Of a DNA stretch of 64,000 nucleotides, positions 15,099 through 64,000 are shown piece after piece; the first letter of the stretch is position 1, and every line of letters starts with the position of its first letter. Under the pieces are notes generated by a model. That model searched no databases and was not told the origin of the DNA. It worked only from the letters and a program-made list of their open reading frames with translations. The stretch covers positions 101,680,001 through 101,744,000 of the forward strand of contig NC_059427.1 of NCBI RefSeq assembly GCF_021028975.2, read 5' to 3'. The translations under genes and the position numbers were made by a program. This DNA is from Sphaerodactylus townsendi (Eukaryota).

Positions 15099-15499
15099 AG
15101 TGTTCTCAAATAAAATATTATGTCCAGTTTTGTTTAACAGATGTTCTGCAACTGCAATTCTGCAGTTCTGCAGTTGCAGAACATGTGTTAAACAAAACTG
15201 GACATAATATTTTATTTGAGAACACTGAAAAAATGGACTGATAACCCCACCCGCAATACAATGCACTCAACCACACCTTTGCATAGCAAGTTCCACCCAA
15301 ACACTTAATGATTGGTTCCCCACCCTGGGACATGGACAATATACCCCACTAAACTTTCCCTTCTCACTTAGACACAGTGTGAAACAGACTTTTCTCTGTA
15401 ATACACCTCTGAAGATGCTAGCCACAGATGCAGGCGAAACATTAGGAACAAAATCCACCAGACCACAGCCACACAGCCCGGAAAACCCACCAGAACCAG
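15099..15499 (+). mobile_element. Penelope-like element fragment with 5' inversion, GIY-YIG remnant and pseudo-LTR
   Basis: Encodes SAVAEHVLNKTGHNILFENTE (Penelope endonuclease C-terminal motif). A 58-bp inverted duplication is present (15099-15156 vs 15169-15226). The pLTR sequence is shared with the copies at 23198, 24256 and 42500. Confidence 0.8.
15406..15446 (+). ncRNA. Minimal type I hammerhead ribozyme motif (Penelope pLTR), stem III palindrome decayed (ACAT)
   Basis: cct-CTGAAGA-t-gct...ggc-GAAA-ca-TT-agg. Confidence 0.65.
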
Positions 15500-16214: not shown

Positions 16215-16362
16215 CAGGGGTAGGGAACCTGCGGCTCTCCAGATGTTCAGGAACTACAATTCCCATCAGCCCCTACCAGCATGGCCAATTGGCCATGCTG
16301 ACAGAGGCTGATGGGAATTGTAGTTCCTGAACATCTGGAGAGCCGCAGGTTCCCTACCCCTG
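16215..16362. mobile_element. Palindromic hAT MITE, 148 bp, 8-bp TSD GTATAGGA
   Basis: Termini CAGGGG...CCCCTG. Nearly perfect hairpin over its length. TSD at 16207-16214 and 16363-16370. Confidence 0.93.
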
Positions 16363-16960: not shown

Positions 16961-17090
16961 CAGGTGTCAAACTCGCGGCCCTCCAGATGTTATGGACTAC
17001 AGTTCCCATCATCCCCTGCCAGCATCATGCTGGCAGGGGATGATGGGAACTGTAGTCCATAACATCTGGAGGGCCGCGAGTTTGGCGCCT
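16961..17090. mobile_element. Palindromic MITE of the same core family
   Basis: caggtgtcaaactcgcggccctccagatg...catctggagggccgcgagtttggcgcct. Near-perfect hairpin whose right end abuts an L2 tail. Confidence 0.88.
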
Positions 17091-22162: not shown

Positions 22163-23197
22163 GCTGCACCAGGGTTTTCAGTAGCATAATGATGAGAGGG
22201 TCACATCTGGGACTGGAGAAGGTTAGGAAACGAGTGAGGTCCTCCTCTGCCCGTAGCCCAGTCCTGAAACCAACCATTTCTATGTACATAGGTTATTATG
22301 ATGCTGCACTGGTTCAACTTGCTGCCAGTGTAACTGCAAGATATCCCAGCATAGTATTTAGTCAGCATCCTAAGCCCAATCAAGACGGGTCTTAAAATGG
22401 ATGTCTAAAAAGTGTAGACATGAAAAAAATAGACGTTGGATGTTTCACCATTGATAAAGCCTTAAATTCAAAGTGCCCTTAGGCTTAAGCAATTTTTTTT
22501 TGTATTTGCACTGAATGTTTCCCTATTTACACTTCCACTTGTCGTATGGAATCCATTGCCGAATAAAGTAATAGTTTCAGCAGTGGCTTGGCAGATGGAA
22601 CTGTTCTTTAAAGAATAGTTTTAGACTCATGCCCATGCTTATTCCCCACACATGAAGAGATTCCCTATGGCCCTTTTGTGTAATTGGCAAATATTTATGA
22701 GCTTTGACTATTATAATAAAAGCCATTTGTGTTTTAGAATTTAAAGGGAGACTCAAAGGAAGATGGAATAATATTGTGGTCAATCAGGCAATGCAAAATA
22801 GCATAATTAAGAATAGTAAGAGTAGAACACTGAGTGTGCTACTGGTTGCTCACTAAGATTCAATTAAAGCACAGAAGATCGATGAGAATACACAAAATAC
22901 AAATGAAAATTGGCAATTAAATTTGCACGGTAACTCCCACTGTTAATGAAAACCTTGCAGGGAGTTTCGTTTGGAGTAAGTTCAAAGATTTATTATGATT
23001 GACATCAGATAGCCACATAACCTTAAAGTCCCAACTTTAATAATGCCATCTTAGAATGTATGTTCACAGTTTCAGCAGGGTTAAGATGGAACACAGTACT
23101 GGCTGTATTATTCAGAATTCTCCTGGGAAACAACTACCCTATTGTGAGAGGAAAATATGCAAACATTTCACTCTGAACCAAACAATTGTATACATTA

Positions 23198-23404
23198 GTT
23201 CTGGAGGGTTTTCCAGGCTGTGTGGCCGTGGTCTGGTGGATTTTGTTCCTAACGTTTCGCCTGCATCTGTGGCTGGCATCTTCAGAGGTGTATCATAGAG
23301 AAAAGTCTGTTTCTCACTGTGTCCACCACCACCAGACCACGGCCACACAGCCCGGAAAACCATCCAGAACCAGTTGAATCCGGCCGTGAAAGCCTTCGAC
23401 AATA
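23198..23404. mobile_element. Penelope pLTR insertion with inverted arrangement and 14-bp TSD AATTGTATACATTA
   Basis: Arms 23198-23240 and ~23329-23370 are reverse complements. TSD at 23184-23197 and 23405-23418. The 3' end is gtgaaagccttcgacaata. Confidence 0.88.
23248..23288 (-). ncRNA. Minimal type I hammerhead ribozyme motif, intact, antisense to SLIT3
   Basis: Minus strand: cct-CTGAAGA-t-gcc...ggc-GAAA-cg-TT-agg. Confidence 0.75.
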
Positions 23405-24255
23405 AATTGTATACATTACTCTTCAACAAGACTCAGTAAATAATAAACGCTACATTTCTAAACTTGTTCCTATGTATCATCATAGCCATGGTTTTTCACA
23501 GTGTGAGAAATGTAATCATGGAGGAACTGGAAACCACAACTCTTATTTTAGCCACAAATATAGTTCCAGTCCCCTCTTCACATATAGTATATAATTTATT
23601 GGTTAATGGAATAAATCTTACATTCTCAAATCTAATTGATAAATTCCATATCACTACTATTAGTGCTCATCCTAATATATTGTCCAACCAGGTCTATTGG
23701 TAAAATGGTACACTTCCAAACCTGAGTTTTTATTCTTTTGGACTGTGCGTCAAATTCTTACTTCAATCTTCATAAAACTGAGCAGAATTATGCCACTTGC
23801 TGAAGATTGTTCTTGTTTTCTAGAAAAACAATGGTTTGAAAAGCAATTTTTTTTAAACTTCTGAAACTTCTACTAAATTTCCCCTTTAATAAATGTGGAG
23901 GTCCTTTCTCTGCATCCAGTTTCAAAGGTCTTAATTCTATGGAACATTTCTGCTTATTGAAGGATTTCCATCAGTTGAGTAGACCTTGCACATCTCTCCC
24001 AACTTCCAATTGCAATTCCAAAAGCTCAATGCTGCTTCAGGGTGGCTCCTTGCCTCCTGTCCCAAAACTAGTTAACCTTGAGGGAGCCAGTCCAGAGAAA
24101 GTCTGCAGTGGGAGAAGGGAATCAGCCCCCACTCCAGGCACAGAAATCCTCTCTTTGTTCTGATTCCCAAAAAGCAAGAATAAAAAGGAAAATGCTATTT
24201 GTATCCATAAAAGTGAAAGTAGAATCCTCCATTCTCTTTATTTAACATACTATGT

Positions 24256-24385
24256 AAGATCCTCTGAAGATGCCAGCCATAGATGCAGGTGAAACGTCAG
24301 GAGAAAATCTACTGGAAAACGGTCATACAACCCGGAAAACCCACAACACCCTAGTCATTCTGGCCATGAACGCCGTGGGCAATAC
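24256..24385 (+). mobile_element. Penelope pLTR short fragment
   Basis: Homologous to 42505-42632. Flanked by an imperfect duplication, atactatgtaa/ataccatgtaa. Confidence 0.8.
24260..24302 (+). ncRNA. Minimal type I hammerhead ribozyme motif, intact core, sense to SLIT3
   Basis: tcct-CTGAAGA-t-gcc...ggt-GAAA-cg-TC-agga. Stem I tcct/agga, palindromic ACGT stem III loop, predicted cleavage after C24298. Confidence 0.78.
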
Positions 24386-26472: not shown

Positions 26473-26570
26473 GGTCGAGATTGTAGCACCCCCATTAATG
26501 CCTGCATTCAGAATCCATGCCAGAATGGAGGGACGTGCCATCTCACAGATACAAATAAAGAAGGATTCAG
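26473..26570 (+). CDS. SLIT3: SLIT3 exon (98 nt), EGF1 end/EGF2: [32 protein letters not shown](S)
   Basis: Acceptor ttcttggtAG and donor GTAACT. EGF motif [12 protein letters not shown]. Phase 0-2. Confidence 0.94.
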
Positions 26571-26892
26571 GTAACTGAAAGCAAATTGCATTAAAATCAT
26601 GTTAATATCTTTTTCTGCTGTTCCTGTCATACAAAAATGTCATATAACTGCAAATCCTGCTGCCATTAAATTAGGGAACAATCCAAAAAAAGTTAAGCCT
26701 TTCTAACCTTGATTTCAGTACAAAAGTTAAGTCACAGGTAAATCTTTCCCATTCAAATCATTGAAACATTAAACTGTTTAACATTGGCTGTATCATGGCA
26801 TTATTTGTTTGTTTGTTTGTTTATTAATTATCCTGCACCTTTCCTGGCTGAGTCAAGCTCAGAATTGCTTACAAAGTCCCCAAAGTTTTTCC

Positions 26893-36472: not shown

Positions 36473-36603
36473 CTATGGTGGCGAACCTATGGCACTCCAG
36501 ATGTTCATGGACTTCAATTCATAGCCAATTGGCCATGCTGGCAGGGGCTGATGGGAATTGTAGTCCATGAACATCTGGAGTGCCCATTGGTTCGCCACCA
36601 CTG
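36473..36603. mobile_element. Palindromic hAT MITE, 8-bp TSD TCCTAGTG, internal deletion in the left arm
   Basis: TSD at 36465-36472 and 36604-36611. Same family as 46118-46251. Confidence 0.9.
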
Positions 36604-39861: not shown

Positions 39862-41771
39862 GGACCCGACGGGTTCCCCCCAGAGTTATTTAAGAACTTT
39901 GTTGACTGGTGGTCCCCGGTACTAGCAGCTCTTTTTACATCCGTTAATCAAACAGCTCTTGTACCATCAGATTGGACCCATGCGATTATAATTCCTGTCT
40001 TCAAAAAGGGAGATTTTTTGCTCCCTTCCAATTACCGTCCGATTAGTTTATTGTCCATCACTGGCAAGGTATATGCAAAATATTTGCACAATAAACTCTC
40101 TTCATGGATTACAGAAAACAAAATCATTGGCCCAGAACAAATAGGATTTCAACATGGGAAATCTACTTTAGATCATTGTTTGATCCTTAGGACTCTCGTC
40201 ACAAAATACACCAGCGGAAGCAAATCATCCCTGTTTGTGGCCTTTTTGGACTTAAAGGGGGCATTTGACTCTGTCTCCAGAAATCTACTGTGGAGAAAAC
40301 TTGTTAATCTAGGAATTGACAGAAGGCTACTTACACTAGTAATGGCCTTACATCATGACACTACCTGTCAAGTCAAATGCTCTCCTGATGGTATACTTAG
40401 TCCTTATATATACCAATTAACAGGGGTGTCAAACAGGGGTGTGTTTTGGCCCCAACCCTATTTAATCTTTTTTTAAGTGATCTGGCTTCCTTTTTGATGG
40501 AGGATTCCTCGCACTGCCCTGCTTTGAATCATATGAACATACCTTTACTTTTGTATGCTGATGACGCTATATTACTCTCCCGTACAAAAGCTGGCTTGAA
40601 ATGCTTACTGGCACGCTGTGTTGAATATTGTAGTCATAATAACCTGACGCTTAATTTTGCAAAGTCAAAAAATAATGGTTTTTGCTTGTTCTTGGAGACC
40701 ATTTAGTTGGCCAATAAATAATGAACAGCTTGAACAGGTCAAACATTTTAAATACCTGGGTCTCCACTTTAATTATAACTCCTCTTGGGTTACCCAAAGG
40801 AAATTGGCCATTGAATCAAGCAAACTTAGTTGCAAGGCCATTAGCCGCTATTTTCGCACCAAAGGTCATGAATTTGTACCTGCAGCCATTAAGGCATTTA
40901 ATGCTAAAATCACCATGCAATTACTATACGGAATCCCACTGTGGATACAAGCATGGAGCTGCGATATGGAAAGAGTTCAGTCATGCTTTCTCTATAGTAT
41001 ACTCGGCTTACCTCACTCAGTCCCATATGCTGCGGTCTGTTTGGAGGTGGGCCAACATCTACTCCATACAAGAGCATGGTGCATGACCTTCCAATTCTGG
41101 ATACCACTGTGCTTTAACAACTGTCACAAAAGTTTTACCTATCAGGCTCTTTCTTTCATAGCCAAAACTAAGTGGTGGTCCTTTGTTGAGGCGAAAATCC
41201 ATGAAATGGGTCTATCCTTGGATGCATTGGCTTTAATGAATGCCAATGAGCTAAAGCTGACTATCAAAAAGAGATTGTATGATCTTGAGTATAGTCACCT
41301 GATGCAGCAGGCTAATAAACGCTGCTCTCCCTTGCACTTGGGTATACCATTAAAACCCTATACCATGGCCAAGTATTTCCATTTGGTCTTAGAACCCAAA
41401 CTGCGACGAGCCCTGACCCTTGCCAGGTGCAATATTCTCCCTTCAGCTACCACTCAGGGCAGAATACAGAAAGTGCCTTTTAATGAAAGATTTTGTCCCT
41501 GCAGTTCAGCTTACGAAGAATCAATCCAACACGTGATATTACACTGCCCGCTACACAGTTTAACCAGGAATAAATATCTAAACCCGTGGTTAAAACCCCC
41601 CATTGATAATATTAATCTATCAATTGTGGTAACGATGTTGGATTGTGGTTCTGTCATCAGCAAACGGTTATAACTGTACTGGAGATTGTATCATTACACT
41701 GAGGTCGCCATTTTTCTGGTATATTGCTGCTGTTTTAATTATGCCATTAAAGGTTTATATATATATATATA
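39862..41771 (+). mobile_element. 5'-truncated non-LTR retrotransposon (RTE-X-like), reverse transcriptase domain plus C-terminal zinc-finger-like motif, frameshifted
   Basis: Motifs GPDG, PVFKKG, NYRPISLLS, QIGF, FLDLKGAFDSV, GVKQGCVLAPTLFNLF, LLYADD, FKYLG and RFCPC..EESIQHVILHC. Ends in attaaagg + (TA)n. Clade assignment is tentative. Confidence 0.9.
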
Positions 41772-42289: not shown

Positions 42290-42632
42290 GTACTGACAGC
42301 CACTCTGGACCACTCTGACAGCCACTATGTTAGACTACACAGAGAAGCCATTGAAATCCACAAGCTCATGGACAATTTCAACAGAAAGGAAGAAACTATG
42401 AAAATGAACAAAATTTGGATTACACTTGCAAAACTGCATCTTTAACACTTTTAACAAATGTAAATGGTTCTTTCTTCCATTCTGGGCGTTTCACACCTCC
42501 ACCAGATCCTCTGAAGATGCCAGCCATAGATTCAGGCAAAATGTCAGGAGAAAATACTACTGGAACACGGCCACACAACCCAGAAAACCCACAACATCCT
42601 TGTGATTCCGGACGTGAAAGTCTTTGACAATA
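42290..42632 (+). mobile_element. Penelope-like 3' fragment (endonuclease C-terminus + pLTR with mutated hammerhead at 42507-42549)
   Basis: Encodes LDHSDSHYVRLHREAIEIHKLMDNFNRKEETMKMNKIW. The pLTR reads tcctCTGAAGA...ggcAAAAtgTCagga (GAAA changed to AAAA). Confidence 0.85.
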
Positions 42633-45600
42633 CATAAGCAATTGTTAAGTAATAGTACTAATAAAATAAATTTCAGAAGTTGGAGCAAGCTTGGGAAGGG
42701 GTCCAAATGAAAAAAATATTGAGAATCACAAGCCTAACTATAGATGTTCTTTGGGGCATTCTGTAGTGATCATTTGTGTATGGAGTAGGGAGCAAAGAAA
42801 CACTGAGGCTAGGGCTGCTAACCTCCAAGTGGCACCAGGAGATCTCCTGCTATTCCAGTTGATTTCCATACAACCAAGATCAGTTACCCAGGCCTAGAGG
42901 AAGTGGCTGCTGTATGGCATTATACCCTACTGAGGTCCTTCCCAAACCCCACCAGAGCTGGCAACTCTAACTGAGACCTTATTAACTGTTTGCTCATTGC
43001 TGTGCGTATCTTTATTGTAAATCAAGCACTGCTGTTAAAACTGCAATTAAATGAAATGTTAGATCAGTTAAACAAATATGTGACTTTTCACCCTGGCTAT
43101 CATCCCAGGCAGAGTTAACCATGATTAGGCTCACTGGTAACAGTAACTGGTAATGAATGGGTGGCGAAAGTCAGGGATTCTGGCTACAGTGTTTGCGGCA
43201 TGAAAGCCTGGGTGGAAGCCTATAGTTGGTTCCACCCCTGAGAATGCTCTGAAGTGCCCTTGCTGCACAGACAGGGCTGGTGGCCATGCAGGAGCACTGA
43301 TGTCAACTCCAGCTACTCATTTTGCTATTCCAGAGAGCTGCAGCATCTGGACATTCTGCCCTTCCGTCGTGTTTAGTGTCCTGGGGAGGGTAAATCTGCT
43401 GACACAGATTTGTGTCGCATCCAGAGAGTGGTTCACCTCCCCCTTTGGATGGGGTTGTAGAATACATAGCTGAATATATACCTTGTCCAGAGTTTTATCA
43501 CCTTAGCTCTCACATTTGACCCGAGAAACTATACATTTTAAGAGTCTTGTTCCAATTCAAAGAGTGCCTTGAAAGCAAATTTTGAAGGCTTGTTTTCCTT
43601 ATTATCCAGTGTAAGCTTTAGATCTTTCCTCCTTCTTCATCTCCCAATTGTCCAAGGTTTTATGAGTTGAAAGTATATTAGCCCAAGGATCTTAGAATAC
43701 AATCTCCCAAGACATAGGATATTTGTTGCATTCTGGGGCCCCTAAATATAACTCCCTACACTCACTATTCAGTGGTAAGGGGGAAAAAAGCTATATACTT
43801 TTAAACCATGAACACTTGAACTGGTCTTGTTACTCTCTGAGCTACAGACACTTAGTGAAAGGCTCCTTGTAAGCTGGAGTGTATTACATATCATGGGATT
43901 TAATAAGTATCAGGTTTGAGGCAACTTGGTAAGTAAATCTAAAATTTCCCAAACTCTTAAAATATTATTTGGGGCCCATTTGGGATGTGTGTGTAAATGG
44001 TTGACTGGGAAAGAACTTAAACTTGAATGAAAACTAATTAGTTTTTTTAACCATCTTTCTGCTGGAAACTTTTACAAGACTTGAATTCAGCAGAATTCAG
44101 CTATTGGTACTTGATGTACTGAATCTAAGTATCCTATTAATTTTTAATCTGTACTTTTGTTTTCCATATGTTTAATGGGTTGGAATGGCTCAGGCAAAGA
44201 AACCTGCTTTCCTATAGCATGGCTAAAGGTGTTTTCCAGCAACAAATTTAAGGTGTAATAGAGCCAGATCCATTGCAAGCTCACTGAAAATATTTTTGAA
44301 AGATACCCTAACTTGGATTTCACTGACTTTCAATTAGTCATTTCTGACTTCAAAATAGATCGTATCTAAAACTCTGGGCACAAGAAGTCAAGTTGTCAGG
44401 GAGTTTTGAAATCATATTTCACTTAAGTACAACTCACTTGTAAAGATTTTGAAACTGTTTTACCTGCTAGAATGTTTGTCTTAATTATCTCAAGGACATG
44501 GTTCACAAACAACTAGTATTTAGATATGAATCACAAATAATTTACTTTGTACTCCAAGAAAATCTCTTTTGATGTTGGTGGGAAAATATAATTTTTTCCT
44601 GCTTTGTGCCCAGTGCACAGATTAGAGCTACTCCTTTCACTTATCTTAAAAATATCAGAGCTGAGCCTGACAAGTCTCCCTCAGAAAAGAAGAGGGACAC
44701 TTGGCAGCTAATTGCCCCACAGTTTCTAGGCCAGCAGGGACCCAGAACTCAGATAGACCACACATCACAAACATTGGACTAGAAAGCCCATGGGCTCATG
44801 AATGGAAACTGGATTTGGAGGCCACAAAGGAGTCTGTCAGAGAAACCCAACCTTCTCTAGGAATTCCACAGGTAGCACCAGTCCCTGGAGAACAGAAACA
44901 ACCTGGATAGGGGCTCCTGAAGCAGAATGCCCATATGGATTCTCAGGACATCTCCTCTGCCCACAAGGCTTGTGACAATCAGGATCCTTCGTGAGGTTTT
45001 GCAGGATGCTGGACTCAGTCCATCTGTATGTATCTGCAGGATTCTGGCCCTAGGGACAGCTGTACTCTGTCACCTTCAGTCCTTCCTGGGTGATTGTGGG
45101 ATCAACAGCTCCATTAGAGTTTGCTGTTGCCTACCTTGATTGCTGCCAACTTGGACTCCTGGTTGGTTTAACTCAGGTCTGCTGGTGCTCAAAGAGTCCT
45201 GACCTTCTTGAAATTATGCTCAGACATGGGAACTATACTGCATCAAAACTGCATATTGGATAAATTTGTACATAGTCAAGACAGAAAGCATTTTTTCTCC
45301 AACATCTGGTCTGCAACTGGATAGAAATAAATCAAGTAGCGGTTCTACTTTATTTAACAGACAAGTTGTATAATTTAATGGCCAGTAATACCTTAACTGA
45401 TGCCAGGCAGGATGAAGGACTTGTATTCCAGTTCGTAAGGAACGGAGTAATCATCACATAAGTATGACTGGTATCTTGCATCCAAATGGATCACAAGAGA
45501 CCAGAATGGACTGGCAGTTAGTAGGTTTCTGCTTGAGTATATAGTAGTTGGTAGACAGATGATAAAAATGACAGTAAAATCTCATTGATATTTAGCCTTG

Positions 45601-45907: not shown

Positions 45908-46449
45908 CATAAGAACATAAGAACTAGCCTGCTGGATCAGACCAGAGTCCATCTAGTCCAGCACTCTGCTACTCGCAGTGGCCTACCAAATGCCTTTGGG
46001 AGCTCACATGCAGGATGTGAAAGCAATGGCCTTTTGCTGCTGCTGCTCCTGAGCACCTGGTCTGCTAAGGCATTTGCAGTCTGAGATCAAGGAGGATCAA
46101 GATTGGTAGCCATAGATCAGTGGTGGCGAACCTTTGGCACTCCAGATGTTATGGACTACAATTCCCATCAGCCCCTGCCAGGGGCTGCTGGCAGGGGCTG
46201 ATGGGAATTGTAGTCCATAACATCTGGAGTGCCAAAGGTTTGCCACCACAGCCATAGATCGACTTCTCCTCCATAAATCTGTCCAAGCCCCTTTTTAAAG
46301 CTATCCAGGTTAGTGGCCATCACCACCTCCTGTGGCAGCATATTCCAAACACCAATCACACGTTGCGTGAAGAAATGTTTCCTTTTATTAGTCCTAATTC
46401 TTCCCCCCAGCATTTTCAATGAATGCCCCCTGGTTCTAGTATTGTGAGA
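45908..46449 (-). mobile_element. CR1 LINE 3' fragment interrupted by a MITE
   Basis: Minus peptide SHNTRTRGHSLKMLGGRIRTNKRKHFFTQRVIGVWNMLPQEVV is identical to the copy at 63.7 kb. (GTTCTTAT)n-type CR1 tail. Confidence 0.92.
46118..46251. mobile_element. Palindromic hAT MITE, 8-bp TSD CCATAGAT, nested in CR1
   Basis: Termini CAGTGGTGGCGAACC...GGTTTGCCACCACAG. TSD at 46110-46117 and 46252-46259. Confidence 0.93.
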
Positions 46450-49079: not shown

Positions 49080-49300
49080 TAACATGGAAGTTTTTTACTG
49101 AAAATGAAAACAGAAACAGGGTTAAAGAGAACATGATTAAATGGGTCCAAGACTTAAAGTAATTGGTTTAGAAAAGTGGGAAAAGATATAAACAAAAAGG
49201 TTAAAATTAAGTTACTATACAATTCTGAAAGGAAATGTTGGTATTTATATCCGATTAAATTAGCTAAAATGTATTCAAATGTTTTGGAAGTTTGTTGGAG
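49080..49300 (+). mobile_element. L1/Tx1-type ORF2 fragment
   Basis: Peptide WYLYPIKLAKMYSNVLEVCWR resembles the L1/Tx1 ORF2 C-terminal region. Confidence 0.5.
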
Positions 49301-49740
49301 AATCTGGGGAAATTTTGGGGATGCCTACTGTCAGGGGTGCAATTGTTAAGCTAGCAGCACCAAACGTTTAGGGTATCTTTAGGAAACTCTCCTGATGATA
49401 ACACCCAGATTTGGTGAAGTTTGGTTCAGGGGGTCCAAAGTTATGGACCCTCAAAGGTGTAGTCCCCATCTCCTATTAGCTCCCATTGGAAACAATGGGG
49501 GATGGGGCGCCCCTTTTGGGAGTTCATAACTTTGGATCCCCTGAACCAAACCTCACCAAATCTGGTTGGTGTCATCAGGAGAGTCTCCTGAAAAATCCCT
49601 GAAACGTTGGTTCTGCTAGCCTAAAAACTGCGTCCTCTGCAGGCCAAAAACTGAAAAAATACAAAAAATACAGAAATGAACTTGAAATTTTTGCGCCCCC
49701 CATGTGACCAAATGGGGGGCGCCCTAGGCAAATACGCCTC
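49298..49740. mobile_element. Internally palindromic non-autonomous DNA element (copy 1)
   Basis: Homologous to 53022-53480. Long inverted arms (tttggtgaagtttggttcagggggtccaaagttatg / cataactttggatcccctgaaccaaacctcaccaaa). Confidence 0.8.
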
Positions 49741-53021: not shown

Positions 53022-53480
53022 AGGAGAATCTGGGGAAATTTATGGGGTGCCTGCTGTCAGGGGTGCAATTGTTAAGCTAGCAGCGCTAAAAATTCAGGGT
53101 ATCTTTAGGAGACTCTCCTGATGATACCACCCAGGTTTGGTGAAGTTTGGTTCAGGGGGTCCAAAGTTATGGACCCTCAAAGGTGTAGCCCCCATCTTCA
53201 ATTAGCTCCCATTGGAAATGATGGGGGATGGGGGCACCCCCTTTGGGAGTCCATAACTTTGGATCCCCTGAACCAAACCTCACCAAACCTGGGTGGTATC
53301 ATTGGGAGAGTCTCCAGAAAAGTCCCAGAAATTTTGGTGCTGCTAGCCTAAAATCTGCGCTCCCTGAAGGCCAAAAACTGAAAAAAACACTAAAAATACA
53401 AAAAAAACACAAACGGGGCGGATCTTCAGACATGTAATGGGGGGTTTGAACCCAGGAAACCCCCCTTACCTGCGTCCATG
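53022..53480. mobile_element. Internally palindromic non-autonomous DNA element (copy 2)
   Basis: Homologous to 49298-49740. Its right end also occurs inverted at ~14988-15090. Confidence 0.8.
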
Positions 53481-59814: not shown

Positions 59815-59945
59815 NNNNNNNNNNNNNNNNNNNNNNNNNNNNNNNNNNNNNNNNNNNNNNNNNNNNNNNNNNNNNNNNNNNNNNNNNNNNNNNNNNNNNN
59901 NNNNNNNNNNNNNNNNNNNNNNNNNNNNNNNNNNNNNNNNNNNNN
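59815..59945. other. Assembly gap (131 N)
   Basis: Run of N. Confidence 1.
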
Positions 59946-62023
59946 CAATATTGTTATGTTGGTTGCAGGGCGGCACATTAAATTTAAGGGGTTTATAGAT
60001 ATCAAGATTAGCCAGAAGAAAATGCTATTTGAGTCTTCTTTTAATGTATTCAGAAAATACTTCTTTAGGGTAAAGAAACATATAAAATATTAAGTGTGGT
60101 GAAGTGATTTGCATCCCAGAAAACACATTTTGGTTGCATGTGGACAAATCCTTCAAAGTCTCTGCGTTTTGTGTGTATTTGTTTGTGCGCTTTCACATTC
60201 ATCTGGCATTCATCCACGTTTGCTCTTTAAATAATATAAATACTTGATCAAATCTAATGTAGATTTTCCTTTCTTTTTTGTGTCCCCTCCCAAACACTTC
60301 ACAGAGGTTGCTGTCCTTTTTTCTAGCTTTCTGCACTTGTATTTTTTGTAAACTTTAGAGTTTAATTTGTTTGATTTTAATTGGAATCAATTATTTTAAA
60401 CTTTTAGAAATTGCATGAAGATGGGAGATGGGAGGGGAGGTTGTTCGCAAAGACTAGCCAATCAGCACTGTGTGTACAACCTTCAAAAGAAATCTAGCCA
60501 CTTGTCATTTAGGCAGGAGTATTTCTTGCTCCTGAGTGAAAAAGGAAGGGAGCAAGAGGTCTTTGGGCAGTTATACCCTGTGTCTGCTCTTATCTGAGGA
60601 TCCCAAACCATCTCTTTTGATGGCTGGGGGACTAGGGGTTTCCCTTTGGTCTGAGCCTGGCATTTAAATAGAAATTATCAGAGTACACTCATCACAAAGA
60701 TCAGCAACACAGCACTTGTACATAGCCCCTTCAAAAAAACTGTGCTTCCCTTTGGTCAATCTAAGAATAGGGTATGTCTTTCCACGTTCATGCTGACCAC
60801 ACTAGTGCAGCAAGCTCACCAATCAAATTATGTATTCTTACTTTTAGGGCAGCCTTCAGACTATTTTCATTATAGTGTGTTTGTCTTAAAATACATCAAA
60901 AGTCCATAAGAAATGCAAGGCTAAGCCAAGCATAGAAATGGACTGTACAAAATCAGGTTAATTAGTTAAGCATTCCTATTCACTACCCTGTTCCTCATTC
61001 CAAAAGTCTGGAGATTCGGATCGCCATGTTTCTGCTTTGCTTTTGCTATACAAGATCTCCATGTCCTGCCTGACAATTTTAAGTCTACGATTCTGACAGC
61101 TGCCAATAGACCTGTCTTCTAAAAATATCTCTGTAGGTCAAAAATAAGAGCACTTCACCAAATGGATACCCTAATAATTGCCTAGGGGTAAACTGTTGCT
61201 TCCTTCCAGACAAACCTTTTCCATATTTAAAACAAAGCATACAGTGAGATAGCAATAGAACTTGTAAAAACTGCTATGATAAATTAGAAATATGGAATAA
61301 TTTCTGAGCCTTTTTCCTGGGTATTGAAAACACCAGCCATTTTCCGACTCCCCAGTTTCATAGTTTCTCTTCTTTTCTTCTGGCCATGTACTTCTGTTGC
61401 AATATTTTGTGTTTAGCATTTTGAAGAACACGTATTGATTCTTGTAGTGATATAAGGTCATGGTCTCAAAAGCTCAATGCTTACAAAAGATAAGATAAGC
61501 AACTGAATTTCTTTGTCTAGCCTGCCTCTTCAGTCCCCTTTTTAAACCTTCTCTTGACTTAATGCTGGTTGCACATAAAAGAGCTAATGGATGCATGTCA
61601 AAGTTCCTGAATTAACTATGTTCCTAAAAGCATCTGTTTGTTGGTGGCATGTTACTAGAAATATCATGAGGAAAACCATGTGGATTAAAAAAAAACTTTT
61701 GGCTTCTGGTGGTGTTATGAATGCTGATAAGATCTTTGGAACTGTGAAGGTCATCACTTGTGTGTCAGAACCTTGCCCGTTCTGGATACTTCAAGTATGT
61801 AAGAATCACATCAGTGAGTTTCTAAAGTTCATTACGAATCAATCACTGACCTAGGGCATCTTTCCTTGTGCCCTAAAACAGTTACATCTGTACATTACTT
61901 TTTTAAAAACCCAGAAAGAAATTATATGTCCAGTTATTGCCCAGTCTCTAATTTGTTCTTCATGTGCAAAATAATAAAAAGTGGTTGCTGAGCAGTTCCA
62001 GGCCACTGGATAAATAATTTACT

Positions 62024-62760
62024 CTAGACCCCTTTCAGTTCAGTTTCAACCTAGGCTACAGGACTGAGACGGCACTGAGATAGTCGCTTCTTTCTAAATG
62101 TAGAAAAAGGTTCTTCCTGTCTGCTGCTTTTCCTAGACATAGCAGCAGCCTTTAATATGGTTCATCGTGTTATCCTGTCGAGACATCTGGAGATAAAAGC
62201 AGGGATTAAGGTATGCTTTTTGGATTTGTTCAGACAGATCTTTAGGGGCAGGACTCTTGCTGTTGGGGAGAAATTCAATCTGTAGGTAAAGGCTTTACAA
62301 GAAATCATTCATGGGTTTGGAATAGGGTATCATCGATGTATTGATGGCACTCAGTTCAGCATTTCTATATTTAAATTGCTTGGTGAGATTCTGAACCAAT
62401 GCCTGACTGTTGTAGTTAAATGGATAAGGTAAACAAGCTGAAACTGAATCCTGAAAGATGGAGGTAATGTTGGTTGGGAAGTCTGAAGTCCTGGAGGACA
62501 TGGTGCTCTTTGCTTTTGATGGGGTTCAGCTGCCTCTCACTAACTCAGTTAAAAGTGTAGGGGATGATGCTGGATTCTGCTTAACAGCTGGAGAAGCAAG
62601 CTAATACATCTGCAAAGAAGGCATTTTACCAACTCCATTTAGCTTGGAAGATGGCCACTACTTTGATTCAGTTGGTGTATCCATGGGTACATAGCTGTAG
62701 ACTACTGCATTCAATATGGGTCTGCCTTAAAGACAATTTGGAAAATCCCATTAGCACAAG
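62024..62760 (+). mobile_element. Old degraded L2 RT fragment
   Basis: Remnant motifs LDPFQ..F.(P)GY.TETAL, LLLFLD.AAAFNMV.H and L.LTNSVKS.G..LD. Confidence 0.65.
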
Positions 62761-62804
62761 TGAAAAGGAATTGCACAGATACTGTCAAGCAGTAAGTGAA
62801 CCAA

Positions 62805-64000
62805 TCAGGCTTTTGACAAAGTTCCTCACCAGAGACTGTTGAGAAAACTCAGCAATGAAGGAATAAGAGGGGAAGTCCTCCTATGGATTAAAAAGTGGTT
62901 GAGGAACAGGAAACAAAGGGTGGGTATAAATGGGAAGTTCTCACAATGGAGAGATGTAGGGAGTGGTGTCCCCCAAGGATCCGTTTTGGGACCAGTGCTC
63001 TTTAACCTATTCATAAATGACCTGGAAGTAGGGGTGGGTAGCAGCAGGCCAAGCTCTTGCAGATGATAACAAATTATGTAGGGGTGGTGGAGAACCACAA
63101 ACATCATGAAGAGCTCCAAGCGGACCTTGATAAATTAGATGAGTGGGCTCAGAAATGGCAAATGCAGTTCAATGTAGCAAAATGTAAAGTGATGCACATA
63201 GGGGCAAAAAAAATCCAAACTTCACATACACGCTACAGGGGTCAGTGCTATCAGTCACAGACCAGGAAAGGGATTTGGGCGTCTTAGTTGATAGTTCCAT
63301 GGGAATGTCAACTCAATGCATGGCAGCTGTAAAAAAGGCAAACTCTATGCTGGGGATCATTAGGAAAGGAGCTGGATAATAAAACTGCAAGCATTGTCAT
63401 GCTCCCATATAAAGCATGTGGAAGCGACCGCGACTTGGAGTACTGTGTCCAGTTCTGGTCGCCACATCTCAAAAAGGATGTCAAAGAGATAGAAAAAGTG
63501 CAGAGAAGGGCAACGAGGATGATTGAAGGATTGGAGCACCTTCCTTATGAGGAGAGGCTGCAGCGTTTGGGACTCTTTAGTTTGGAGAGGAGACGTCTGA
63601 GGGGTTATATGATTGAAGTCTATAAAATTATGCATGGGGTAGAAAATGTTGACAGAGAGAAATTTTTCTCTCTTTCTCACAATACTAGAACCAGGGGGCA
63701 TTCATTGAAAATGCTGGGGGGAAGAATTAGGACTAATAAAAGGAAACACTTCTTCACGCAACGTGTGATTGGTGTTTGGAATATGCTGCCACAGGAGGTG
63801 GTGATGGCCACTAACCTGGATAGCTTTAAAAGGGGCTTGGACAGATTTATGGAGGAGAAGTCGATTTATGGCTACCAATCTTGATCCTCCTTGATCTGAG
63901 ATTGCAAATGCCTTAACAGACCAGGTGATCGGGAGCAACAGCCGCAGAAGGCCATTGCGTTCACATCCTACATGTGAGCTCCCAAAGGCACCTGGTGGGC
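62805..64000 (+). mobile_element. CR1 LINE, RT C-terminal half and 3' UTR, runs off the window end
   Basis: Peptides [50 protein letters not shown] and KVQRRATRMI. Several indels. Confidence 0.95.

What the first reader, a model, noticed from the sequence alone, without database searches (positions are those of the whole stretch)
24260..24302. Intact hammerhead ribozyme motif in the sense strand of a SLIT3 intron
Seen: tcct-CUGAAGA-u-gcc(loop)ggu-GAAA-cg-UC-agga has the full hammerhead core (CUGANGA, GAAA, UH), a 4-bp stem I and a palindromic ACGU in place of stem III. Established: Penelope-like element pLTRs carry such minimal type I hammerheads, which generally cleave efficiently only as dimers. 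Inference: SLIT3 pre-mRNA could be cut co-transcriptionally after C24298 between the EGF1 and EGF2 exons if a partner motif is available in cis or from other Penelope transcripts.
Basis: partly seen in the sequence, partly recalled or inferred. Interest (0 to 1): 0.8.

Follow-up and report, generated by a model that had tools for sequence, protein, structure and literature searches.

The report
Dead Penelope retrotransposon's hammerhead motif
The hammerhead-ribozyme motif is really there, but every copy of a very abundant Penelope-like retrotransposon carries it, and this copy is a short, decayed, solitary fragment that most likely does nothing to the SLIT transcript.

Summary
Window 24260-24302 (+) has the full hammerhead core, a 4-bp helix I, a bulged U after A9, a helix II hairpin and ACGU in place of helix III. 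A minimal-hammerhead descriptor finds it, with 0 hits in 200 shuffles.

It is not special. It is one of five fragments in the window of a Poseidon-type Penelope-like element (PLE). As in the published Anolis element PAc, the PLE start codon opens helix II, the cut site lies 26 nt after the ATG, and the copy ends at +116, inside PAc's internal reverse-transcription start zone (+111-118). Summed contig depth on the repeat is 10^4-10^5 times that of the flanks. This scan already holds 30 notes on such motifs elsewhere in this genome.

This copy is about 160 nt, 5'-truncated and about 16% diverged from its nearest relative here. It reads G.U where the class conserves G10.1-C11.1. It has no sense partner within 8.9 kb, and an antisense copy lies 0.9 kb upstream.

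Published tests found no cleavage by single motifs. PAc cleaves only with its own protein and leaves no RNA ends in vivo. Cleavage of SLIT pre-mRNA is therefore unsupported and unlikely. No RNA runs were available to test it. Verdict: an already known kind, low interest.

The parts
24260..24302 (+). Minimal type I hammerhead motif of copy A. It comprises helix I, the CUGAAGA core, a bulged U, the helix II hairpin, GAAA and ACGU in place of helix III, with C17 at 24298.
   Evidence: Sequence. Unique pattern match with 0 expected by chance. Descriptor hit with 0 hits in 200 shuffles.
24225..24385 (+). Copy A, a 5'-truncated Poseidon-type PLE fragment made of the end of the pLTR, the hammerhead and the first 116 nt of the PLE ORF. 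The 5' limit is approximate.
   Evidence: Blastn and alignment to copies B-E. 83.5% identical to B over the 126-nt unit. Short pieces of the Poseidon_Ac consensus match with 2-3 mismatches.
24270..24385 (+). Remnant of the PLE ORF start. The ATG at 24270-24272 spans A9, the bulged U and G10.1. The remnant ends at +116, the 'tail' end.
   Evidence: [quoted passage not shown] Coordinates.
23198..23323 (-). Copy D, antisense to the gene and the best-preserved hammerhead in the window (23288-23248). It has G10.1-C11.1, ACGU and U17, and ends at +82, the tail-less end.
23329..23405 (+). Copy E, the 3' part only (about +40 to +117, no hammerhead). It sits head-to-head with D, and the two form one fold-back insertion.
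   Evidence: A Poseidon_Ac 24-mer matches 23382-23405 with 3 mismatches.
23184..23197 (.). Left target-site duplication of the D/E insertion (AATTGTATACATTA).
   Evidence: Exact 14-nt repeat with 23405-23418.
23405..23418 (.). Right target-site duplication of the D/E insertion.
15371..15497 (+). Copy C, sense, in the preceding intron. Its core is intact but ACAU replaces ACGU. It is 94% complementary to D and ends at +82.
42308..42633 (+). Copy B, sense, in a later intron. It holds the last ~37 codons of a PLE ORF, a short pLTR, a hammerhead with a dead core (G12 and C15.2 changed) and a tail ending at +117.
   Evidence: The C-terminal peptide is 31/37 identical, by eye, to the Poseidon_Ac translation.

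Best explanation
The motif is the hammerhead that sits at the junction of pseudo-LTR and ORF in a Poseidon-type Penelope-like retrotransposon.

Why every copy carries it:
- These elements are transcribed as tandem copies.
- Reverse transcription starts inside the next unit, about 82-85 or 111-118 nt into its ORF.
- So every insertion longer than about 125 nt carries the hammerhead near its 3' end, however 5'-truncated it is.

What this copy is:
- Copy A (about 24225-24385) is such a terminal fragment. It has no coding capacity and is diverged from its relatives.
- Its 13 core nucleotides have survived.
- The helix II closing pair has decayed to G.U.
- It has no helix III, so it cannot fold into an active monomer.

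An active site would need a second matching copy to supply helix III and helix I in trans. For the characterised relative it also needs the element's own protein.

Inference: in the SLIT intron no such partner is at hand, so the motif is a molecular fossil with no or negligible cleavage and no effect on SLIT expression.

Shown: the anatomy, family membership, copy abundance and lack of a cis partner. Inferred: the inactivity in vivo.
For: Family membership:
- Five related fragments lie in the window.
- 22-24-nt pieces of the published Poseidon_Ac consensus match them with at most 3 mismatches, against 0 expected by chance.
- The ATG opens helix II and the cut site is 26 nt after it, exactly as reported for PAc.
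- Copies A, B and E end at +116/117. Copies C and D end at +82. These match the two published RT start and 'tail' boundaries at about 85 and 111-119.
- Copy B runs on from the C-terminal codons of a PLE ORF.
- The D/E fold-back has a perfect 14-nt AT-rich target-site duplication containing ATT, the reported target preference.

Abundance:
- Summed contig depth over the repeat bins is 10^4-10^5 times that of the unique flanks in four DNA runs.

Arguments against activity:
- G10.1.U11.1 occurs only in A. Copies B, C, D and Poseidon_Ac have C at 11.1.
- A:A double-hammerhead structure -13.1 kcal/mol, against a cofold MFE of -21.9.
- A:C double-hammerhead -4.3 kcal/mol.
- Antisense duplex with D -142 kcal/mol.
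- Published tests found no cleavage by single min-HHRs, cleavage of PAc only with its protein, and no in vivo ends.
Against: - All invariant core positions, the bulged nucleotide, the palindromic 15.2-16.2 pair and a 4-bp helix I are intact. Catalysis in a dimer, or with PLE protein, cannot be excluded from sequence.
- G.U at 10.1-11.1 weakens the motif but need not abolish activity.
- The genome holds very many related transcribable copies that could act in trans.
- D may be occupied by C (duplex -230 kcal/mol), which would leave A single-stranded.
- No RNA data were available, so inactivity in vivo is inferred, not shown.
Confidence: 0.82

Rival explanations
1. Conditional ribozyme. The motif pairs with a second PLE hammerhead RNA, or is assisted by PLE protein, and cuts the SLIT pre-mRNA after C24298. 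This would lower or modulate SLIT output.
For: - The core is intact, with palindromic ACGU and a 4-bp helix I.
- The family is very abundant, so trans partners are conceivable.
- PAc's hammerhead does cleave when its protein is present.
Against: - Dimers of min-HHRs cleave poorly and mostly at non-physiological Mg2+.
- No in vivo ends appear at the PAc site even for an expressed, active family.
- This copy has G.U at 10.1-11.1.
- There is no competent cis partner, and the double-hammerhead fold is not the favoured structure.
- Intron cleavage by a slow hammerhead did not reduce splicing in the published test.
Confidence: 0.07
2. The fragment matters through base pairing, not catalysis. Copy A pairs with antisense copy D 0.9 kb upstream in the same intron to form a long imperfect dsRNA hairpin. 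That hairpin could attract editing or dsRNA-binding proteins, or alter intron folding.
For: - A and D are about 81% complementary over 94 nt.
- The predicted duplex is -142 kcal/mol.
- Both lie in the EGF1-EGF2 intron.
Against: - D pairs better with C (94% over 126 nt, -230 kcal/mol), which is transcribed earlier.
- Such inverted repeat pairs are commonplace in introns.
- There is no RNA evidence.
Confidence: 0.1
3. Chance resemblance: a random sequence that happens to satisfy the hammerhead consensus.
For: The individual consensus blocks are short, and Rfam finds nothing.
Against: - 0 hits in 200 shuffles for the structural descriptor and 0 expected for the pattern.
- The motif sits inside a repeat that is homologous to a published hammerhead-bearing PLE over more than 100 nt.
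Confidence: 0.01

Closest known systems
PAc / Poseidon_Ac, the Poseidon-clade Penelope-like element of Anolis carolinensis (PMC11167929)
   Same: - The hammerhead sits at the pLTR-ORF junction.
- The ATG is at the start of helix II and the cut site is 26 nt after it.
- The motif has a bulged U after A9, a 6-position helix II with a 7-nt loop, and ACGU with no helix III.
- Insertions end at the internal RT start sites (about +82-85, or +111-118 with the 'tail').
- 22-24-nt segments match with 2-3 mismatches.
- The N-terminal peptide starts MPAID..GE.SGEN in both.
   Different: - Copy A is a ~160-nt dead fragment of a diverged subfamily.
- In helix II it has A.A where PAc has U.G, G-C where PAc has G.U, and G.U where PAc has the G10.1-C11.1 pair.
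- The spacer upstream of helix I is longer.
- It has no ORF.
min-HHRs of metazoan PLEs (Cervera & de la Pena 2014, PMC4209133)
   Same: [quoted passage not shown]
- No helix III, with palindromic 15.2-16.2.
- Mostly solitary copies from truncated PLEs, some as close pairs on opposite strands.
- Reported in reptiles (turtle and snakes).
   Different: The class is described with a highly conserved G10.1-C11.1 pair. This copy has G.U there and an internal A.A mismatch.
Conserved intronic hammerheads of amniotes (Rfam Hammerhead_HH9 and HH10) and canonical type I hammerheads (Rfam Hammerhead_1)
   Same: It lies in the sense strand of an intron of a protein-coding gene and has the same catalytic core.
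   Different: - It has no helix III and no loop-loop tertiary contacts.
- It gets no Rfam hit even at E<=10.
- Conservation is shown only in a ~1% diverged genome.
- It is a lineage-specific repeat copy.
Non-LTR retrozymes (tandem hammerhead repeats giving circular RNAs; PMC7229834, bioRxiv 10.64898/2026.07.22.740005)
   Same: Hammerheads derived from PLE pLTRs. Monomer copies are dispersed, and about 43% of copies overlap introns in Xenopus.
   Different: There is no tandem sense arrangement here, so there is no unit that could be excised and circularised.

Membership tests
Hammerhead ribozyme, minimal PLE type (min-HHR) | Invariant core C3 U4 G5 A6 N7 G8 A9, G12 A13 A14, A15.1-U16.1, H17 | tested here: met
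   24264-24270 CUGAAGA, 24291-24294 GAAA, U24297, C24298.
Hammerhead ribozyme, minimal PLE type (min-HHR) | Unpaired nucleotide between A9 and 10.1 | tested here: met
   U24271. The feature is described.
Hammerhead ribozyme, minimal PLE type (min-HHR) | Highly conserved G10.1-C11.1 pair | tested here: not met
   G24272.U24290 wobble. Copies B, C, D and Poseidon_Ac have C at 11.1.
Hammerhead ribozyme, minimal PLE type (min-HHR) | Enlarged helix II (6-8 bp) and short helix I (4-5 bp) | tested here: inconclusive
   Helix II has 6 positions: 5 pairs including the G.U, plus an A.A mismatch. Helix I is 4 bp.
Hammerhead ribozyme, minimal PLE type (min-HHR) | No helix III, with palindromic 15.2-16.2 that allows a dimeric helix III | tested here: met
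   ACGU at 24294-24297. A nested double-hammerhead structure can be drawn with 22 pairs at -13.1 kcal/mol.
Hammerhead ribozyme, minimal PLE type (min-HHR) | Site-specific self-cleavage | not testable with these tools
   No RNA runs hold the locus. The data are DNA contigs only.
Rfam hammerhead families (Hammerhead_1, _3, _II, HH9, HH10) | Covariance-model score at or near the gathering threshold | tested here: not met
   No hammerhead hit at gathering or at E<=10 on 401-nt and 63-nt stretches. The best family copy D also fails, so the models do not cover this class.
Penelope-like element, Poseidon clade | Hammerhead at the pLTR-ORF junction, ATG at the start of helix II, cut site 26 nt downstream | tested here: met
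   ATG at 24270-24272, and 24273-24298 is 26 nt. PAc description.
Penelope-like element, Poseidon clade | 3' end of insertions at the internal RT start ('tail' boundaries at about +85 and +111-118) | tested here: met
   A ends at +116, B at +117 and E at the same end. C and D end at +82. Published values.
Penelope-like element, Poseidon clade | Sequence similarity to a curated PLE | tested here: met
   Poseidon_Ac segments match with 2-3 mismatches in 22-24 nt, against 0 expected.
Penelope-like element, Poseidon clade | ORF with reverse transcriptase and GIY-YIG endonuclease | tested here: not met
   Copy A has none because it is 5'-truncated. Copy B keeps only about 37 C-terminal codons. The only RT in the window is a LINE-type RVT_1 at 40018-40473.
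Penelope-like element, Poseidon clade | Target-site duplication at an AT-rich site | tested here: inconclusive
   The D/E insertion has a perfect 14-nt TSD containing ATT. Copy A has only 6-nt candidates.
Non-LTR retrozyme | Two or more sense hammerhead units in tandem | tested here: not met
   The nearest sense copies are 8.9 kb upstream and 18 kb downstream.

The most novel reading that the evidence does not exclude
In cells that express an active Poseidon-type PLE protein, its protein-assisted hammerhead activity might act on the many sense-oriented relic motifs inside host introns, this SLIT intron included. That would be a genome-wide, transposon-dependent layer of host pre-mRNA cleavage.
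Probability: 0.03. Interest if true: 0.6.

Novelty: already known. Interest (0 to 1): 0.1.

Why it matters
It matters mainly as a calibration point. In a genome rich in Penelope-like elements, an intact-looking hammerhead core in an intron is the expected by-product of how these elements insert. Every insertion ends just downstream of the hammerhead.

Such motifs should therefore not be read as host gene regulators unless there are RNA ends, cross-species conservation or a tandem partner.

The five copies in the window also reproduce, in another genome, the two 3' boundaries predicted by the internal-initiation model for PLE reverse transcription. One copy pair is a fold-back with a clean target-site duplication. 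These are a small independent agreement with that model.

Tried and rejected
- Rfam scans: whole window at gathering, and three small stretches at E<=10. It is not evidence against the motif.
- Monomer fold: -10.4 kcal/mol with z-score -0.25. There is no special stability, and the MFE is not a hammerhead fold.
- RNA evidence: the look-up of sequencing runs listed no run on record as RNA. The four holders are contigs, which read laying treats as DNA. No RNA ends, coverage drop or editing could be examined.
- Target-site duplication for copies A, B and C: only 6-nt matches or none, so A's 5' limit stays approximate.
- Pfam on the short ORF remnants of A and B: no families.
- Lunse et al. 2017, on PLE hammerheads cleaving as dimers, is not held. 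The supplements of Cervera 2014 are not held.
- Full alignment of the window copies to the 2667-nt Poseidon_Ac consensus, and BLASTP of the B remnant against its protein: left out. I used only short pattern searches and comparison by eye.
- SLIT3 versus SLIT1 or SLIT2: not tested with a tool.
- Chance origin: rejected.

Full report
**1. Observation**

In standard hammerhead numbering:
- Helix I is UCCU (24260-24263) paired with AGGA (24299-24302).
- C3-A9 is CUGAAGA (24264-24270).
- An unpaired U follows at 24271.
- Helix II is 24272-24277 paired with 24285-24290. It has five pairs, one A.A mismatch and a G.U closing pair, around a 7-nt loop.
- G12-A15.1 is GAAA (24291-24294).
- C15.2-G16.2 is 24295-24296, U16.1 is 24297 and C17 is 24298.
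- ACGU is a palindrome with no loop, so a monomer cannot form helix III.

Chance does not explain it:
- The pattern CTGANGA-N(8-38)-GAAACGTC occurs once, with 0 expected.
- A structural descriptor hits twice in the window and never in 200 dinucleotide shuffles. It requires helix I of at least 3 bp, an optional bulge, helix II of at least 4 pairs, GAAA, a paired 15.2-16.2 and UH.

Rfam gives no hammerhead hit at gathering score or at E<=10, even on a 63-nt stretch. The same is true for the best copy of the family. The Rfam models simply do not see helix-III-less hammerheads.

**2. Gene context**

SLIT-type EGF exons lie on the + strand:
- About 19.30-19.39 kb ([12 protein letters not shown]...).
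- 26473-26571 (...[14 protein letters not shown]...).
- About 39.25-39.40 kb, 52.8-52.9 kb and 58.8-58.94 kb.

The motif is therefore in the sense strand of the ~7.1-kb intron between the EGF1 and EGF2 exons, as claimed. Assignment to SLIT3 rather than a paralogue rests on my memory of the human proteins.

**3. What it is**

The motif is part of a dispersed repeat. The window holds five fragments:

| Copy | Coordinates | Strand | Note |
|---|---|---|---|
| A | ~24225-24385 | + | the finding |
| B | 42308-42633 | + | 83.5% identical to A over the 126-nt unit |
| C | 15371-15497 | + | |
| D | 23198-23323 | - | 94.6% identical to C |
| E | 23329-23405 | + | 3' part only |

The key comparison is with PAc, the Poseidon element of Anolis carolinensis, characterised in vitro in PMC11167929. 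In PAc:
- The hammerhead lies at the junction of pseudo-LTR and ORF.
- The cut site is 26 nt after the start codon.
- Reverse transcription starts internally, 111-118 nt into the ORF.
- An optional ~34-nt 'tail' spans roughly nt 85-119.

Copy A has the same layout:
- The ATG is 24270-24272 (A9, the bulged U and G10.1).
- 24273-24298 is exactly 26 nt.
- The copy ends at 24385, which is +116.

The other copies fit too. B ends at +117 and E at the same point. C and D both end at +82, close to the tail-less boundary.

Direct sequence links:
- Segments of 22-24 nt from the Poseidon_Ac consensus printed in that paper's supplement match the window copies with 2-3 mismatches, against 0 expected by chance.
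- Upstream of its hammerhead, copy B continues into about 37 codons ending in a stop (42308-42445). By eye these are 31/37 identical to the C-terminus of the Poseidon_Ac protein.

D and E sit head-to-head. They are flanked by a perfect 14-nt duplication, AATTGTATACATTA, at 23184-23197 and 23405-23418. They are therefore one fold-back insertion into an AT-rich site containing ATT. That fits the reported target preference and PAc's ability to extend both DNA strands.

The family is very abundant. In four public DNA contig sets from two closely related organisms, summed depth over the repeat bins is 10^4-10^5 times that of the unique flanks. This is a rough indicator, not a copy number. Organism B, about 1% diverged, has the same flank-repeat junctions.

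The scan's own index lists 30 earlier first-reader notes on hammerhead or Penelope motifs elsewhere in this genome. I treat those as a lead only.

**4. How intact is this copy?**

| Copy | State of the motif |
|---|---|
| D (antisense to the gene) | Best: G10.1-C11.1, ACGU, U17 |
| A | Full core, but U at 11.1 where B, C, D and Poseidon_Ac have C. This falls at a CpG. |
| C | Core kept, but ACAU replaces ACGU |
| B | G12 and C15.2 lost |

Searches give these states. Cervera & de la Pena list a highly conserved G10.1-C11.1 pair among the marks of the class, together with the nucleotide between 9 and 10.1, the palindromic 15.2-16.2 pair and a short helix I. Two of four copies passing the descriptor is what neutral decay of a roughly 10-20% diverged family would give. 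Nothing singles out copy A as preserved.

**5. Would it cut the SLIT transcript?**

In a double hammerhead each active site takes its core, helix II and 15.x strand from one copy. It takes 16.x-H17-1.x from the other. A partner must therefore match in both helix III and helix I.

| Structure (ViennaRNA) | Energy (kcal/mol) |
|---|---|
| A:A double hammerhead | -13.1 |
| Two separate A monomer folds | -17.6 |
| A:A cofold MFE | -21.9 |
| A:C double hammerhead | -4.3 |
| A with the antisense image of D, 0.9 kb upstream in the same intron | -142 |
| C with D | -230 |

C pairs even better with D and is transcribed first, so it is open which arm D occupies.

Published experiments on this class are discouraging:
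- A single min-HHR showed no detectable cleavage. Dimers and trimers cleaved poorly, mostly at non-physiological Mg2+.
- The PAc hammerhead showed no cleavage without PAc protein.
- No RNA-seq reads begin or end at the PAc site, and coverage shows no discontinuity there.
- An intron cut by a slow hammerhead was spliced about as efficiently as an intact one (Dye et al. 2006, as described in PMC2995048).

No run on record as RNA holds this locus, so the direct test for ends at 24298/24299 could not be made.

**6. Verdict**

- The proposed cleavage of SLIT pre-mRNA is unsupported and unlikely.
- The feature is an ordinary terminal fragment of a known, hammerhead-bearing retrotransposon family. 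Its motif is present because of how these elements insert, not because of any role in the host gene.
- Novelty: already known. Interest: low.
- The least conventional reading I cannot exclude is protein-assisted cleavage at relic intronic motifs in cells that express an active PLE. I put it at about 3%.

**7. Limits**

- The 5' limit of copy A is approximate.
- The organism is not disclosed. A squamate origin is only inferred from the similarity to the Anolis element.

Noticed in passing
window 23184-23418: Copies D (-) and E (+) form one head-to-head (fold-back) PLE mini-insertion flanked by a perfect 14-nt target-site duplication, AATTGTATACATTA. One arm ends at +82 of the PLE ORF and the other at about +117, the two published RT start boundaries. 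The hairpin draws a spurious sub-threshold Rfam VA RNA hit (31 bits, gathering 62).
   Followed up: yes
window 15371-15497 (+) and 23198-23323 (-): Copies C and D are 94% complementary over 126 nt and 7.7 kb apart. They bracket the EGF1 exon, and the predicted RNA duplex is -230 kcal/mol. I confirmed only the complementarity.
   Followed up: partly
window 40018-41673 (+): A LINE-type reverse transcriptase remnant lies in a SLIT intron, just upstream of PLE copy B. It scores RVT_1 E=6e-17 at 40018-40473, has a weak zf-RVT further on, and carries a YRPISLL motif. It is not a PLE RT.
   Followed up: partly
window 16215-16362, 16962-17090, 46120-46249 (also 36520-36597): Several near-perfect palindromes have 62-74-nt arms, 96-98% complementarity and 0-6 nt between the arms. 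They belong to one dispersed family (arms contain ...GGGAATTGTAGTCCATGAACATCTGGAG...). They look like MITE-type or hairpin-forming repeats.
   Followed up: no
window 46289-46449 / 63675-63835 and 45981-46118 / 63863-64000: Long inverted repeats (161 nt at 99% and 138 nt at 90%) lie 17 kb apart near the end of the window, beside a strong positive GC skew in 62001-64000.
   Followed up: no
window 49297-49659 and 53023-53386: A repeat of about 360 nt occurs twice, 3.7 kb apart, at 87-90% identity. Each copy is itself internally inverted. The pair flanks the EGF exon at about 52.8-52.9 kb.
   Followed up: no
window 23988-24092: All four public contig sets differ from the window here by a cluster of substitutions and small deletions (11 other letters and 19 gap positions in one contig). 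This suggests a polymorphic or mis-assembled low-complexity stretch about 170 nt upstream of copy A.
   Followed up: no
window 59815-59945: A run of 131 N (gap or masked).
   Followed up: no
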